Shown: positions 2,166-9,662, numbered from the stretch's first letter. The stretch is DNA of 43,208 nt from Perkinsus chesapeaki ATCC PRA-425 (GCA_013115145.1 JAAPAO010000283.1:1-43208), one strand, 5' to 3'. Notes: generated by a model from the letters alone, not told the origin. Translations and numbers: made by a program.

Positions 2166-2886
2166 TTCAGAAGTTTTCTAGTGCTACGGCGTTTAGTTAG
2201 TTGAGATGGAACGTCCATAAATCCGGCAGACATGCCGCGCAGAGCTAATGACGTGAGTTCTTTTAAGAACTGGTTCTAAGTTAGACGGTCTAACTTAGAC
2301 CGCTGATTTCAAACTACAGGGTCTTTGTCTTCGTCTCCCTTTGATCACACACGAACGACATTTTGTTGGAATAGAGCCTCGATTCAACTAAGCATCAGAA
2401 CAGTGTATCGTAGTACTTGTTGTGAACACAGATGGTCGATAGTACGATAATCTGCTAAGGTTATACGGTCTGCTTGCTGCCAAATTATCAGTCTACTACG
2501 GAAGTGTTAGCTCAACCTATGATACTACCGATTAATTCACGTACCTACTGTCTATTTGCAACGGCGGAGTAGTTTCACCGCAGATTCAACCTTGCAACAC
2601 AAGGTAATCTTGGCAAGATTCACACTAGCGGATATCGTGGCCAAAGACTACCGATATGCGGTGATAGGTTCACAGTACGACAGTGCATGAAGGTGCTAAG
2701 ATACGCGCACTAGCTCTTTCGTGCACGATCACACATTGAGTTACACTCGGAAGAAGCGCAACAAGCCCCAAAGGGAAGGAGCCCCCATACAAATCCAAGG
2801 CAGTCACTCCAACCCAGCTCTGACTATCAACGTGGTGAATGGTAGAATCATCGCATGCACAATATACTTGGATACCTCGCTCTAGT

Positions 2887-5800
2887 TTAAAGGTCGTCCG
2901 GTTGCATTGAAGTACCGCATACGCTCCTGAGTAGTGCGAGCTTGACGGCACGAGTCCAACTCTCGTACACACCATCAAACTGTCCATATCCTCGTTGAGC
3001 TGCAATAGTCGCTGCTCCTGGCCATTCGCGTGTTGCCTTGAGCGGAAATCAATCGCATAACCTGAACTCAGTGCAGGAGACCCGATATACTTAAGTGCCA
3101 ACCTCGCTTTCGATACTCCTCGACCTCTGCTCGGAGTTCGAACAACTCGATCAGTGCCCGATCGTGCTCTTCCTCGAGCTCATCGTATCTGCGTGCTTTT
3201 ATCTACAGTGATTTTCTGTATCTCAGTACGCCTCGACGAGCTTCCAATAGCTGGCTGAAGTTTTCTTTTTTTCCGGTAGACCTCCTGAGTTTTCTTGAGT
3301 ACTCTGAGAAATGGCTCTAGCACTATGTAATGCTTCCTTTTCCTCTGCCGAAGGGTAGGCCAGCTCCTTGGTTGAACGAGAATCCCGCCCAACATAAAAT
3401 AAATTGACGCCCGTATAGTCGTGAAGGTCTGTCCCGGTGGCACTCTGGCCTGGGGCCTGATCAAAGTTAGGTGTTCACTTGCCCGGCAAGGGTCCAGCAA
3501 TACGGCCGGTTGAGCAATCGGAGTTAGGGGAAAGATTCCAGACTCATCAGAATAGCCTAACTTTAATAGCTCTTCGCGGACCTAACGGAGGGGTTCAGTT
3601 CCCGCAGGGTCCCGGAAAACTCGTACATCGTGGGTTATGACAAGGTGGCCAGACTGAGCTACTTGGGCGACGGCCACCGCACAGTTCACTGTTTCCCCAC
3701 TGAGCACATATCTAGCAGCATGGCTTGCAAACACCGTGGAGCGTTTAAACCACCTGGGATTCATGGCCGCGATTACCATTCCGTGGGCTGGACCACAGTG
3801 CATGCTCATGCGCAGAGTGAAAAAGTCTTTATGTGTCACTAATGCCTCACCGAGCACACTTTGGCCAAACCTAGTTACCGTGTGATAGCACGGCTACAGA
3901 ATCACAGGGCTTTCACCTAAGCATCCTCTCAACATGTTCGTGCTTCCGGGGGGTCCTGTGTTGGAGAGGTGTGCTCGAAGGATCGTCGATGCCTCCAGCA
4001 GCAAGAAACGTGAGGTTTTGGACAAATGGAGTTGTATAGAGCTGATATTCCCGAGCCTTGACAGATTTCCCTTGTACGGGGCAATAGAGCCACTGAGGTT
4101 TAGGACCTCTTGCTGGATGAAGTTGTATAGGTCATTGACAGCGGCCGTGAAGTCGTATGATTCCTTTTGGGAAGTCTGTGTTGCTGTGATACATATGACC
4201 ATAACCTAAGGATTCAGTAATTCTTGCACCGTACGAGTAAGGGCCAACTTACTGATACCATCGGGTACGCTTGAGTCACGTTATCTTCTCCCTCTTCGAT
4301 ACGGTCACAGATAGAGCTCGGCAGGGATTTTCTCATAAAGTCAAGCCGAGTCTGGGCCTAATTTTTGGACTATGCCGAAACAGATAGAGCACGCTTAGCT
4401 ACTTCTGCGGCCGAAGCTGATAGCTGATGCAAGGCAAACATGCATTCTAATCTGGACAGCAACTGAAACTTGTCGAAAGGCTTGTAAATGAAGTCATTAG
4501 CCCTGCGAGGAACAGAAATATAGTACTCCAGAGCAAGTCGGAGGGCACCACCTGGCTTCAACTGCATCTCGCAGGATCTCACTGCTCTTCCTCGTAGACA
4601 TGCAAAGTATCAGAAGTTTATGCGAAAACCCTTCTCGAAGCTTTTTGATATACCTGACTTACTCTGGAAATCGATTACTAGTTCGTATTACTCGCAGCCA
4701 GCTTTGTCCCCTCTGACGTCCGTATCGACCATGACCAAATCGGGTACCTGAGAGCCGGCCTATACCAACACTCTACATGAGAGCCGACTAGCCGATGGGT
4801 CTGCAACCATTGGTCAGCGGCGTTGGTGGTAGACGCTTGATGAAAAAACCTAAAAATGCCTGAAATAGCTTTCACATTGTCTTGAAGGCTACCATTTATC
4901 TTCTGCGAGTTCGGGGAGATTTTCCAAGATGGCTAGAGTCATTGGATCCTCGTCAACCAGTAGAATATGCCTAGTCTCAGCATGCTGCGACGTATGCTTT
5001 GCTACAGTTCGAGCCGACAGCTGAAGCGCGAGCAGAATCTCCACATGGGTCTTGAGATTGATTTGAGCAGCTTTCAGAGAGATTTTTTTCATTGTCTTGA
5101 GATAATGAACGCATCATTTCTGTCTCCCGATTGTGTATTTCAAGCTCGGCAGACCTGGAGGCAAACCTTGTCTTGGCGCTGTGCAGCCTCGAGCGCCCGC
5201 TTGGCTTGAATTGACGCTGCAGCATCTGCATCTCTTCTGCTGGTTGGTAGACTAATAGTGACGCTGGTACCAAGTCCCTTACCTGGAAGAATAACCGACC
5301 CATCATCATGACGATGATGATCATGGACCACGTCAATATCGCTACCGGTACTCTCAATATGAAACCTTCCACCATGCGCTTTAACAATCCTTTCGACTAA
5401 TGCTAGTCCGAGGCCTATATGAAAGACTTGCAACCTTCAAGTCATTGATATCCACGTACCTAGCCCTTCATACTGTCTTAGCGCATGATCCTCCTCGCCC
5501 TGCTCGAACGGGTGAAGGATGCGGGCAAGGTGCTCCTCTTCTATGCCACAGCCCGTATCAGAAACCTTAGTACCGAAACGTCGGCAAAGCAAAGAGCTTG
5601 AACATACTCGGAAGAATGCGAAGCGGTCTGGCAGCTCCGGATCGACCATGTCGTGAACGGGGTCATGAGGATCGTCGAAATCGGGAACATGCACCTAAGA
5701 CCGATTGATGCGTTTCGGGGCGATGAACTTTCACACTCGGATCGTTCCTTCGTTCGTGAACTTGCACGCATTGCCAAGTACGTGCGACATCACTAGTTTG

Positions 5801-7290
5801 AACTTCTCGATATCAACCCAGACAACCGGAGGATAATCGAGATTGGTTGGGCACTCTTGCACCAAGGAGACCGCTGAAAAGGTTGTTGAAGTGCCAGCTG
5901 ATATCAGGTCACCGTGCCTGGTTTCAGCAAGGGTCGACCGCTCTTATCACAAGCCGTTTTTTGGGCGTGAACGGCCTCCTCGAGTGCATTGTAGAGATCA
6001 ACTGCTCGGGTTCTACATGAACAATCTTCCAGAAGCGCTGAAACTACAGCTTGTACTTCAGGCGCGAATCTTGAGCGAGCATCTTAGACATCTCGGTCAC
6101 GTCCTTGAATACTTCAAGGAGCCTCTTGGCCGACCCTGTCGACACCGTGCACTCTCTTGGAGACATGGAATGTGACACACCTTTCACGAGTTCCAAGTGC
6201 CTCTTGCGACCTGGGTTCGATTCACTTCCAGCTAGCGCATCTGCCAGGCCTATAATAGAAGAGACGGTTTCGCGCGAAAAACACAGTGGTCACCTATTAT
6301 GCCATTTATAGGTGTTCGTAATTCATGGGAGATATTTGCCAGCAGCGTCTCTTTTCTTATCTCATTTAGCTTCCTCTCGGATGTATCCTTCAGGATGAAT
6401 ACGATAAATACGGGCTCACGATCCTCATCTAGTTCTACTTAGCAAGATCAGCTTCCGGCAAACGCTTATGAGCCTACCAGCATGCCCATCATTTCTAACC
6501 TTCATCTCTAAGGTCCTGGACCACGAAAACGTGCGTCCCTCCTGTGTTTCGGGGGCGGATGCTGTCGGAGGGCGAATAAGTTGAGATAGAGCGAAGAGTC
6601 GTCCTTGTACTTCAATTGGAAACGTATGGCCTTGGCGGTGTATCCCATACGCCTGTGGATTAAAGGCAAACATGTTTGAGGATTCACTGGTATTCAGCCA
6701 CAAAAAAATCTTATGAAAGGATGGGCCTACGGACCTGCCTGCACTGCAATCAAGGTAGGCTTTTAGAAATGTTGCATGCGCGTGCATAAGCTGCACTTTG
6801 TTTTAGGACACTCACTTACCTCACGAAAGTGGATGAAGTCGGCCGGCCAAAACCCGTTCTTTTCCTTGCACCGCGCCATGCGTGCAATGAAACGTTCCAG
6901 CTGCGGCATGTGTAGTTCCTGGCTCTCTGGGGCCATGAAAATAGACATCTTCGAAGAGCTTAAGCTGGAGCGAACGGTACTCGGGCCTATTACTCCGAGT
7001 CTGTCGTCTTACTGTGTGTGGTCGAAGCCGAAAAGCTGCACTGTGGCCTGATTTGCTGCGACGATTTCACCCTCCAGATTGGTGATAACCATCGGGTCCA
7101 GCACGCACTCTGTAACTGCTATGAGAGTGAGGGCCGGCCCTTGCTGCGCGGCGGCAACTTGGCTGAGACGTCGCACTCTGCGAAGATGTAAGAATACTTT
7201 GCACTTTCCTTAAGGCGATTACCCTATTGCTGGCGGTTTCTCATCTCGCTGTCTAGGGTTCCTCGGGATAGAGTCTGTTGTATCGCTCAT
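2887..7290 (-). CDS. Soluble hybrid histidine kinase: PAS - HisKA - HATPase_c - REC - degenerate class III nucleotide cyclase - coiled coil
   Basis: Spliced translation gives PAS (DPMVITNLEGEIVAANQATVQLFGF...SIFMAPESQELH...FRE|AYGIHRQGHTFPIEV...VFIVFILKDTSER) and H-box SHELRTPINGIIG (His codon 6325-6327). It continues with N-box LGNACKFT, G1 DTGCGI, F-box PFEQ, G2 GLG|LGL, and receiver ILLVDEDP...PDLVMVD...ILCMST...GANDFIYKPF. Then SLPSSICDRIEEG...YPMVS|VMVIC...LRMSMHCGP...NPR|YVLSGETVN and a coiled coil YDELEEEHDRALIELFELRAEVEEY. Stop codon at 2887-2889. No transmembrane segment seen. Confidence 0.9.
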
Positions 7291-8169: not shown

Positions 8170-9662
8170 TCATCCAGATTTCCCGCCATCTGAGCAGAAG
8201 AGTGTATCAATTCTAGGTCGTATGTGCTTAGACAGCTGTCTAGACACGAGTAGTAAGCGGCGGATACCTACCTGGTATGCTGGGAAGATGAGTCCCATGT
8301 TGCGCTTTGCCATGGTCATGAACTGCTCGTATGATATCTTAACGCTGGCTGGGTCGCTCTTACTAAGCCCTGAAACATCGTTAGGTGTGACAAGCAATGA
8401 CTGAGGAGCACCCCTTCACCCATTGACTCTAATATTGTGTTGGCCTTTTCTTGAATGACACCCGGGGCTGCATCTGGGAAGTTGGCACTGACCAGGAGTT
8501 CAACAGCTCAAGAGCAAAAACTCGGTACCGTAGGATATTGAGGAGTTCGGAGTGATCGATGAAACCGGACTGATCTTCATCGAACATCAAAAACGCAAAC
8601 TGCAGCTTGCTGATCTGGTTGCTTCCAGTGTAATTAGACAAGCCAACCTGGAAAGGAGGCTTTGTCTCTAGACATCAGCTCGGTGGATACGATGAACTCT
8701 TTAAGCTCAATAGAGCCGCTTTTATCGGCATCGAATACGTCAAACATTCGCTTCATGAGGTAGGAGTCCTTCTGCTCCATCACGGCAAGGAATCTGCGTT
8801 AGGCGCCTTCCCTTCATTTCCCGCGCTTTCTCATGTTTACTCGGGATATTCGATTCTACCAGAGCCGTCCTGGTCAACAGCTTGGAATTTCTTGTACACC
8901 TTTTTGATGTAAGCTGGTTTGAGCTTGGTTCCACCAGTGAAGCCTTCCATTATCCTAATAGGTTAATCACCACATCCGATCAAAGTGGTATACTTAGTCA
9001 TGCTATCTAGTCCTTGGGACCCGGCAGTGGGACTGACACCTGAGCCCTCTCTCACAGTGCTGCACAGATTCTACGAGGCTCACCGCCGGCGATGGCACCA
9101 CTTGAAGCTTTCGGTGGTTTCGGTCCAGGGCCTTTTCTTTCAAAGTCTATGTTGTGCGGATCCTCGCTGAATAGGGCGCGGAAAGCTGGAAAGGATGCCT
9201 GACAGATGCTCGAGGCAAGCAGTTCTTTGTTGGAAGTGACCTGGCCATCTCCGTCAGGGTCGCACATCGCTATCATTTCGTCAATTTCAGCATCGGTGGC
9301 GCTCTCTCCAATGAGAGAGAGGACATGACGGAGTTCGCTGGCGCCAACCTAAAAAGGCTTGGACAATGCCAGCTTTGCTCTCTCCCACATAGCCATTTCT
9401 GTCGAGATCGAATGAGTCAAACGCTGCTTTGATTTCATCATCTGCGTAGGTCATATGCTCGGCAGCTACCTGCAAATGCAAGGGCCTTCTTCAACGTTTC
9501 GTGACCATCATTTCGCTTTAGGAACCGGAAGACAAGCCAAAGTGATTGAATCGATTGTGTGACCTTGGCTGCTGGTTTGTGTGGCTTGTCTCGAATAGCC
9601 GTCACGGCACCCGGCAATGATACTACTCCGTTTACCGACTGCTGCACGCTTTCTTCTGCCAT
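8170..9662 (-). CDS. Multi-EF-hand calcium-binding protein (5-6 EF hands; calmodulin-like pair plus calcineurin-B-like lobe)
   Basis: Loops DLDRNGY|VGASE, DPDGDGQ|[29 protein letters not shown] and [12 protein letters not shown], plus a degenerate final hand (ISYEQF). Linker [15 protein letters not shown] is calmodulin-like. Confidence 0.85.

What the first reader, a model, noticed from the sequence alone, without database searches (positions are those of the whole stretch)
6370..7130. PAS domain retains the FixL/EcDOS heme ligands: putative O2 sensor
Seen: SIFMAPESQELHMPQLERF has His (codon 6912-6910) eight residues after the conserved Met, as in FixL NILMPEPDRSRHDSYISRY. Removing intron 6819-6653 gives FRE|AYGIHRQGHTFPIEV, which matches FixL GRIVTGKRRDGTTFPMHL, including the Arg four residues before Gly. 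The domain ends EPVFIVFILKDTSE, like EPYFTGFVRDLTE. Established: that His is the proximal heme ligand and that Arg the distal O2 ligand in FixL. FixL sequences were recalled, not searched. Inference: a heme-based O2/NO/CO sensor kinase, plausible for an organism facing hypoxia.
Basis: partly seen in the sequence, partly recalled or inferred. Interest (0 to 1): 0.82.

Follow-up and report, generated by a model that had tools for sequence, protein, structure and literature searches.

The report
FixL-like PAS domain, heme unproven
The sensor (PAS) domain of a Perkinsus chesapeaki histidine kinase does carry a histidine and two arginines in the columns where the bacterial oxygen sensor FixL binds heme, but the histidine is a tyrosine in the sister species P. 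marinus and the rest of the heme pocket signature is missing, so a heme-based oxygen sensor is possible but not the most likely reading.

Summary
The window is a Perkinsus chesapeaki contig. The finding lies in the PAS domain of a minus-strand, intron-split hybrid histidine kinase (PAS-HisKA-HATPase-receiver-cyclase homology; KAF4664617.1).

The peptides, the His codon (6912-6910) and the intron 6819-6653 are as described. The intron is used in the deposited model and keeps its position and phase in P. marinus and P. olseni. HMMER, hhalign and MAFFT all place His96, Arg102 and Arg125 on RmFixL His194, Arg200 and Arg214. RmFixL is the best solved-structure match (E 7.6e-5).

The heme interpretation is weakened:
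- P. marinus has Tyr for the His in both haplotypes and Cys for the Arg in one, although the domain is under strong purifying selection.
- The residues that FixL and DosP share around the heme (Asn181, Pro187, Tyr197, Gly211, small residue at 245) are not kept.
- The domain scores 31-35 bits against a FixL-family profile. That is the range of LOV and other non-heme PAS domains (26-43), far below DosP (80-88).

My estimate is about 0.25-0.3 that it binds heme.

The parts
7222..7290 (-). First coding exon (MSDTTDSIPRNPRQRDEKPPAIG). No transmembrane segment, so the protein is soluble.
   Evidence: P0001 N-terminus matches the window translation.
7013..7177 (-). PAS exon 1: N-cap, A-beta, B-beta, C-alpha and D-alpha (VRRLSQ...VQLFGFDHT).
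   Evidence: Pfam PAS_8/PAS_9/PAS on this piece. This is the best-conserved block against FixL.
6965..7012 (-). Intron 1, 48 nt, GT..AG, phase 2.
   Evidence: Equivalent short introns occur in P. marinus and P. olseni.
6820..6964 (-). PAS exon 2: E-alpha, a long F-alpha helix and the FG loop. It holds His96 (6912-6910), Arg102 (6894-6892), His123 (6831-6829) and Arg125 (6825-6823).
   Evidence: Codons verified. Columns assigned. The AF2 model gives a 25-residue helix for P0001 residues 90-114.
6653..6819 (-). Intron 2, 167 nt, phase 0.
   Evidence: GT..AG. Used in P0001. Position and phase are conserved in two other species, the sequence is not conserved, and there are in-frame stops.
6478..6652 (-). 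PAS exon 3: rest of G-beta, H-beta (AYGIHRQGHTFPIEVQGRLFAL), then a long variable H-I loop.
   Evidence: 77% identical as protein in P. marinus and also conserved in P. olseni. The loop has pLDDT below 50 in the model.
6435..6477 (-). Intron 3, 43 nt, as in the deposited model. This stretch is open reading frame without an intron in P. olseni.
6294..6434 (-). PAS exon 4: I-beta (EPVFIVFILKD), the D-T-S-E motif, a 20-residue helical linker and the H-box (ISHELRTPINGIIG).
   Evidence: Pfam HisKA on this piece. The distance from Asp201 to His221 is 20 residues.
2700..6293 (-). Rest of the gene: DHp, HATPase_c (N-box exon about 5737-5877, G1/G2 about 5143-5694), receiver and cyclase-homology domain.
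   Evidence: Pfam on P0001. tblastn of the P. olseni protein on the window.

Best explanation
The region encodes the PAS input domain of a soluble hybrid histidine kinase of Perkinsus chesapeaki. The domain order is PAS, HisKA, HATPase_c, receiver, then a cyclase-homology domain.

The PAS domain belongs to, or sits next to, the FixL/DosP branch of PAS domains. In P. chesapeaki and P. olseni it keeps His, Arg and Arg in the columns of FixL His194, Arg200 and Arg214.

It is otherwise a strongly diverged, Perkinsus-specific PAS domain. The F-alpha helix and FG loop are nine residues longer than in FixL, the H-I loop carries a 40-60 residue disordered insertion, and the FixL/DosP pocket signature is absent.

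The candidate ligand His is replaced by Tyr in P. marinus while the domain stays under strong purifying selection. I therefore infer that the conserved job of this domain does not depend on a His-ligated heme. It most likely senses another, unknown, small ligand or a protein partner.

The signal would pass through the conserved D-x-S-E motif and a 20-residue helical linker to the DHp histidine. From there it would go by phosphorelay to the protein's own receiver, which gates the C-terminal cyclase-like domain.

Shown: domain identity, gene structure, residue alignment and conservation pattern. Inferred: the absence of heme and the signalling route.
For: - Domain architecture comes from Pfam. 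PAS_4 scores 28.5 bits against a cut-off of 23.1.
- His to Tyr occurs in both P. marinus haplotypes and Arg to Cys in one.
- Purifying selection: pN 0.12-0.15 against pS 0.68-0.86 across 193 codons.
- The FixL-family profile gives 31-35 bits for the Perkinsus PAS, 85 bits for the DosP heme PAS and 15 bits for DosP PAS-B.
- The same kind of profile against the PDB gives FixL 170-200 bits, DosP 80-88, the FG214 heme PAS 55, and LOV and other non-heme PAS domains 26-43.
- Of 40 columns that are at least 90% conserved in 243 FixL-type domains, Perkinsus keeps 12-14. Non-heme controls keep 11-16 and DosP keeps 16. Asn181, Pro187, Pro189, Tyr190, Asp195, Tyr197, Thr204, Gly205, Gly211 and Gly213 are lost. 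Gly245 is replaced by a bulky residue (Val or Phe, depending on the aligner) in the local HMMER and MAFFT alignments.
- Foldseek on the model mixes FixL, LOV, NifL and uncharacterised PAS domains at the same E-values.
- ESM Atlas look-alikes are generic PAS clusters.
Against: - The triad His96/Arg102/Arg125 is anchored by ungapped blocks and reproduced by three aligners.
- None of the six non-heme-type control PAS domains that aligned across these columns had both His and Arg in the His194 and Arg214 columns.
- The two best solved-structure matches of the Perkinsus profile are both heme-binding PAS domains: RmFixL (E 7.6e-5) and FG214, PDB 10jx (E 0.032).
- The nearest metagenomic relatives found (L005-L008) carry the His and score 60-70 bits on the FixL profile.
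- Xing et al. 2023 (PMC10468136) argue that one His can suffice for heme binding in this PAS cluster.
- His is the ancestral state. It is shared by P. chesapeaki and P. olseni across saturated synonymous divergence.
Confidence: 0.5

Rival explanations
1. The PAS domain binds heme b through His96 on F-alpha and acts as an O2/NO/CO sensor that switches the kinase. Arg125 would be the distal hydrogen-bond donor, as with FixL Arg214/220 and DosP Arg97, and Arg102 would hold a propionate. P. marinus would have lost or changed the cofactor.
For: - The His, Arg and Arg columns match in three alignments.
- FixL is the top PDB sequence hit and a second heme PAS (FG214) is next.
- Hydrophobic residues Phe121 and Ile122 fall on FixL Ile209/Ile210 in hhalign.
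- Met88 falls on Met186, Phe103 on Tyr201, and Gly129 and Gly134 on Gly218 and Gly223.
- His and Arg are conserved in all P. olseni isolates seen.
- Cluster-3 (FixL/DosP-type) PAS domains fused to guanylate cyclases are listed for Naegleria in Xing et al. Data S3.
Against: - P. marinus has Tyr for the His in both haplotypes and Cys for the Arg in one, under strong purifying selection on the domain.
- The pocket residues shared by FixL and DosP are lost.
- Phe or Val replaces the invariant Gly245 (Ala in DosP) under the heme.
- A 9-residue insertion lies in the regulatory FG region.
- The profile score is in the non-heme range.
- BjFixL and DosP are not retrieved by the Perkinsus profile, and hhalign against DosP gives probability 4.8%.
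Confidence: 0.28
2. The residue matches are coincidence within a generic PAS fold. The domain binds nothing and serves only as a dimerisation and scaffold module for the kinase.
For: - The overall score to FixL is generic.
- Arg in the Arg200 column is common in non-heme controls, 2 of 4.
- The I-beta strand (VFIVFIL) has no glycine, which suggests a well-filled core.
- No homologues outside Perkinsus were found by two database searches.
Against: - The domain is under strong purifying selection, including the F-alpha helix and the strands that line the pocket.
- The chance of His plus Arg in both anchored columns is low. None of the six control domains that aligned across these columns had both.
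- Exon 2, which forms the pocket, evolves faster in P. marinus and by unusual changes: His to Tyr, two Phe to Cys and one Arg to Cys. That looks like a change at a functional site rather than drift in a scaffold.
Confidence: 0.2

Closest known systems
FixL heme-PAS domain (Sinorhizobium meliloti, PDB 1d06; Bradyrhizobium, PDB 1drm/1dp6)
   Same: Both have a PAS fold directly upstream of a HisKA/HATPase kinase. His, Arg and Arg occupy the columns of His194, Arg200 and Arg214. The G-x-x-F-P motif in G-beta/H-beta and the C-terminal D-x-(T/S)-E motif are shared. FixL is the best PDB sequence hit.
   Different: The Perkinsus domain scores only 31-35 bits on a FixL profile, against 170-200 for FixL. 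It keeps 12-14 of 40 family-conserved columns. F-alpha/FG is nine residues longer and the H-I loop carries a 40-60 residue insertion. The His is not conserved among orthologues. It is eukaryotic, intron-split and fused to a receiver and a cyclase-like domain.
E. coli DosP (EcDOS) heme-PAS, PDB 1v9y/9cdr
   Same: His77 and Arg97 correspond to His96 and Arg125. The distal-ligand column (Met95) is occupied by a residue able to ligate iron, His123.
   Different: Met95 itself is not kept. DosP scores 85 bits on the FixL profile and keeps Asn181, Pro187, Tyr197, Gly211 and a small residue at 245, none of which Perkinsus keeps. hhalign of the Perkinsus profile against the DosP PAS gives probability 4.8%.
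FG214 heme-PAS one-component regulator (PDB 10jx; bioRxiv 10.64898/2026.03.15.711900)
   Same: It is the second-best PDB sequence hit of the Perkinsus profile. It is a precedent for a proximal His on F-alpha plus a distal His or Met about 16-19 residues later, which is analogous to His96 and His123.
   Different: The match is weak (E 0.032) and limited to the N-terminal half. The output domain (HTH) is different, and no evidence for hexacoordination exists here.
PmariHK1, the Perkinsus marinus hybrid HK with a C-terminal CYCc domain (Kabbara et al. 2018, PMC6324907)
   Same: It has the same architecture class (HK-REC-cyclase in Perkinsea), which was described as unusual in eukaryotes. The P. 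marinus orthologue of this gene is syntenic.
   Different: That paper does not discuss the PAS domain or a cofactor. I could not confirm that PmariHK1 is the orthologue rather than one of the paralogues.

Membership tests
PAS domain | Match to curated PAS profiles and the five-stranded PAS fold | tested here: met
   PAS_4 scores 28.5 bits against a cut-off of 23.1. The AF2 model has a PAS core with pLDDT above 90 and the strand/helix order A-B-C-D-E-F-G-H-I. Foldseek gives 290 PDB matches at E up to 0.001, and all 50 listed are PAS domains.
FixL/DosP-type heme-PAS | Proximal His on F-alpha in the FixL His194 (Bj His200) / DosP His77 column | tested here: met
   His96 aligns there in HMMER, hhalign and MAFFT. 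This holds for P. chesapeaki and P. olseni only.
FixL/DosP-type heme-PAS | The ligand His is conserved among orthologues | tested here: not met
   P. marinus has Tyr (TAT) in both haplotypes, while the domain has pN 0.12-0.15 against pS 0.68-0.86. The His is invariant in 243 of 243 FixL-type domains.
FixL/DosP-type heme-PAS | Distal Arg at the start of G-beta (Rm Arg214 / Bj Arg220 / DosP Arg97) | tested here: met
   Arg125 aligns there. It lies 9 residues before the Gly of the G-x-T-F-P block, as in FixL. It is polymorphic (Cys or Arg) in P. marinus.
FixL/DosP-type heme-PAS | Pocket signature shared by FixL and DosP: Asn181, Pro187, Tyr197, Gly211 and a small residue at 245 | tested here: not met
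   Perkinsus has Lys/Arg at 181, Ala/Thr at 187 and Gln at 197 (the P. marinus rows at 189-201 are shifted by the aligner). Column 211 is Trp, His or Ile depending on the aligner, and column 245 is Val or Phe.
FixL/DosP-type heme-PAS | Profile score in the range of proven heme-PAS domains | tested here: not met
   The Perkinsus PAS scores 31-35 bits. Proven heme PAS domains score 55-200 bits, and LOV, WalK, CitA and other non-heme PAS domains score 26-43 bits.
FixL/DosP-type heme-PAS | Binds heme b (Soret band) and changes output on gas binding | not testable with these tools
   This needs protein expression and spectroscopy.
Hybrid histidine kinase (two-component) | H-box His, N/G1/G2 boxes of HATPase_c, and a receiver with the phospho-accepting Asp | tested here: met
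   HisKA 52 bits, HATPase_c 49 bits and Response_reg 48 bits. SHELRTP, LGNACKFT, SDTGCGI, GLGLGLALV, the MVDTD aspartate and the receiver Lys (KPF) can be read in the window translation.

The most novel reading that the evidence does not exclude
This would be a eukaryotic, FixL/DosP-derived heme-PAS kinase-cyclase. In P. chesapeaki and P. olseni the domain would bind heme through His96. The conserved His123, which sits in the column of the DosP distal ligand Met95, could make it a six-coordinate bis-His sensor like FG214. Arg125 would stabilise bound O2. The output would be a phosphorelay to a cyclase-like domain.

P. marinus would then represent a recent cofactor change. The His became Tyr, and the FG loop gained three cysteines (RCKEKHGCWLPDCIHFCE), which recalls PAS domains of this cluster that bind Fe-S instead of heme.
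Probability: 0.2. Interest if true: 0.75.

Novelty: new member of a known kind. Interest (0 to 1): 0.38.

Why it matters
Direct heme-based gas sensors of the FixL/DosP type are well established in bacteria but have not been shown biochemically in alveolates. Apicomplexans and the dinoflagellate sampled by Kabbara et al. have no histidine kinases at all, and Perkinsus has only a few (PMC6324907).

A FixL-like O2 sensor wired to a cyclase-like output in a shellfish parasite that lives in periodically hypoxic hosts would be a testable link between oxygen and second-messenger signalling. The three Perkinsus species would offer a natural His/Tyr comparison.

As it stands, the sequence evidence does not carry that claim. 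What it does provide is a well-defined construct and a short list of mutants.

Tried and rejected
- Pfam and PDB searches on single exon pieces gave only weak PAS_8 and HisKA hits and nothing for exons 2 and 3.
- AlphaFold2 with only the three Perkinsus sequences failed (mean pLDDT 35).
- The second model (pLDDT 82) used an alignment dominated by FixL-type rows, so it is biased towards FixL. Even so, Foldseek did not separate heme PAS from LOV or FAD PAS. I give it no weight for the cofactor question.
- Searches for further relatives found only Perkinsus orthologues: a phmmer scan of 1.8 billion representatives with exon 2 and two word-index searches.
- One metagenome scan found nothing. The second found five bacterial PAS domains at 33-38% identity over the N-terminal half.
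- The Perkinsus sheet of Xing et al. Data S3, which would give the PAS cluster number, is cut off in the stored supplement.
- A rough comparison by eye of side-chain sizes at pocket-facing strand positions was inconclusive. Val216 to Ala and Val232 to Gly make room, while Gly245 to Phe or Val fills it.
- I considered and rejected the idea that exon 3 is not coding, as in the P. olseni model P0009, which skips it. It is conserved as protein in all three genomes and supplies the G-beta and H-beta strands.

Full report
**What is there.** The window is a 43,208-bp contig of Perkinsus chesapeaki. A phmmer scan of 1.8 billion representative proteins with the His-bearing exon returned a 954-aa protein that is 100% identical (P0001). 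This protein is KAF4664617.1, 'hypothetical protein FOL47_005040', whose only contig has the length of this window. Pfam on P0001 gives PAS_4/PAS_9, HisKA, HATPase_c, Response_reg and Guanylate_cyc, in that order. The finding therefore lies in the input domain of a soluble hybrid histidine kinase on the minus strand. The same architecture in P. marinus has been noted in the literature (PmariHK1; Kabbara et al. 2018, PMC6324907).

**Check of the observation.** The His codon is CAC at 6912-6910. The proposed intron 6819-6653 has GT..AG ends and phase 0, and the deposited model uses it.

I fetched the syntenic loci of P. marinus (L003) and P. olseni (L004). In both, an intron of different length (130 and 159 nt) sits at exactly the same codon boundary. 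These introns have in-frame stops and no alignable sequence, while the downstream exon (A[YS]GI.RQG..FPIEVQGRLFALSQ...) is conserved as protein. This makes the junction FRE|AYG solid and a hidden exon unlikely.

**Does the alignment to FixL hold?** I took the real S. meliloti FixL from pSymA (L001). Its 505-aa ORF has His194, Arg200, Arg214, Ile209/210, Leu230 and Val232 at the published numbers. I took E. coli DosP from K-12 (L002). I then collected 120 FixL-type proteins and built a profile from their 243 heme-PAS domains.

HMMER, hhalign of a Perkinsus alignment against a FixL alignment (probability 96.4%, E 1.2e-9) and MAFFT all give the same placement:
- His96 falls on His194.
- Arg102 falls on Arg200.
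- Arg125 falls on Arg214.

The His and Arg102 are tied without gaps to the conserved FG(Y/F)...(I/L)(L/F)M block. Arg125 lies nine residues before the Gly of G-x-T-F-P, exactly as in FixL.

The best solved-structure match by sequence is the RmFixL heme domain (E 0.016 with one sequence; E 7.6e-5 with the three-species profile).

**Is it a heme-PAS?** Here the evidence turns. There are five points.

First, conservation. P. olseni (several isolates) keeps His and Arg. P. marinus has Tyr (TAT) in both haplotypes, and Cys (TGT) for the Arg in one of them. Across 193 PAS codons, synonymous sites are saturated (pS 0.68-0.86) while pN is 0.12-0.15. The domain is thus under strong purifying selection in all three lineages, yet the supposed iron ligand is one of the sites that changed. 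In 243 FixL-type domains the His and Arg214 are invariant.

Second, the pocket. Of 40 columns conserved at 90% or more in the FixL family, Perkinsus keeps 12-14. Non-heme PAS domains from the same bacterial proteins keep 11-16, and DosP keeps 16. The residues that FixL and DosP share around the heme are all different: Asn181, Pro187, Tyr197, Gly211 and a small residue at 245. Position 245 is Val or Phe.

Third, overall similarity. The Perkinsus PAS scores 31-35 bits on the FixL profile, against 85 for the DosP heme PAS and 15 for DosP PAS-B. A FixL profile run against the PDB gives FixL 170-200, DosP 80-88, FG214 55, and LOV, WalK, CitA and other non-heme PAS domains 26-43. The Perkinsus domain sits in the generic range.

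Fourth, the Perkinsus profile does not retrieve BjFixL or DosP at E up to 10, and hhalign against DosP gives probability 4.8%. The match to RmFixL rests mainly on the N-terminal, cofactor-independent half.

Fifth, structure. With only Perkinsus sequences AlphaFold2 failed (pLDDT 35). With FixL-type and metagenomic rows added it gave a confident PAS core. That model has a 25-residue F-alpha helix, so the nine extra residues lengthen the helix and FG region, and a disordered H-I loop. Even with that bias, Foldseek ranks FixL, LOV, NifL-FAD and uncharacterised PAS domains together at E of about 1e-6. ESM Atlas neighbours are generic PAS clusters.

**What still speaks for heme.**
- Of the six non-heme-type PAS domains that aligned across these columns, one had His in the His194 column and one had Arg in the Arg214 column. 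None had both.
- The bacterial metagenomic relatives found with Perkinsus peptide patterns (L005-L008) carry the His and score 60-70 bits on the FixL profile.
- Xing et al. 2023 place FixL and DosP in one PAS cluster. In that cluster 60% of members have the His, and the authors argue that a single His can suffice for heme binding. They also list cluster-3 PAS-guanylate cyclase fusions in Naegleria.
- His123, invariant in the three Perkinsus species, falls in the column of the DosP distal ligand Met95. FG214 shows that a bis-His heme PAS exists.
- A rough comparison by eye of side-chain sizes at pocket-facing positions neither excludes nor supports a heme-sized cavity.

**Verdict.** The step from 'residues align' to 'heme-based O2 sensor' is not carried by the comparative data. 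I put the heme reading at about 0.25-0.3. About 0.5 goes to a diverged FixL/DosP-related PAS sensor whose conserved function does not need His-ligated heme. About 0.2 goes to coincidence in a ligand-free scaffold domain.

In all readings the domain should act on the kinase through its conserved D-x-S-E motif and a 20-residue helical linker to the H-box His221. This is analogous to FixL, where the same motif precedes a 36-residue linker (counted by me in the sequence).

The P. marinus changes cluster in the pocket-forming exon: His to Tyr, two Phe to Cys and one Arg to Cys, giving C-x5-C-x4-C-x3-C in one haplotype. Xing et al. mention Fe-S binding variants in the FixL cluster. That is a lead, not a finding.

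**Limits.** There was no RNA evidence, no coordinates from the model, a small control set, only three species, and the stored supplement that would give the published PAS cluster number is truncated.

Noticed in passing
window 5737-5877 (-) and 5143-5436 (-): The deposited model P0001 skips the exon that carries the N-box (ECPTNLDYPPVVWVDIEKFKLVMSHVLGNACKFTNEGTIRV) and splices out part of the G2/lid end (SVILPGKGLGTSVTIS). Both stretches are open in the window, and the first is present in the P. olseni protein. The real kinase core is therefore probably more complete than the annotation shows.
   Followed up: partly
L003 6323-6466 (P. marinus exon 2); P0004 and P0007: The P. marinus FG region reads RCKEKHGCWLPDCIHF(C/R)E. 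This gives four cysteines spaced C-x5-C-x4-C-x3-C in one haplotype and three in the other, where P. chesapeaki and P. olseni have one. Together with His to Tyr, this looks like remodelling of the pocket.
   Followed up: partly
L004 3626-3934 (P. olseni) against window 6435-6477: P. olseni has no intron between PAS exons 3 and 4. The stretch is one open frame and the H-I loop is about 17 residues longer. P. chesapeaki needs a 43-nt intron there. The P. olseni model P0009 skips exon 3 altogether, and the P. marinus models skip its first 38 codons.
   Followed up: partly
window 8429-9662 (-); L003 2040-5137; L004 1546-2834: An EF-hand protein gene lies directly upstream of the kinase in all three species. 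Two P. olseni models (P0134, 1274 aa; P0135, 1664 aa) include the kinase, and the first 400 residues of P0134 carry that EF-hand sequence fused upstream. Whether they are ever co-transcribed is open.
   Followed up: no
window 6965-7012, 6435-6477 and about 6248-6293: This gene has very short introns (43-48 nt) next to one of 167 nt.
   Followed up: no
L005-L008 (peat/soil metagenome contigs): These bacterial PAS domains have the motif LIPARLRDRH.QH and His in the FixL His194 column, but no Arg in the Arg214 column. They score 60-70 bits on the FixL profile and are probably uncharacterised heme-PAS proteins.
   Followed up: no
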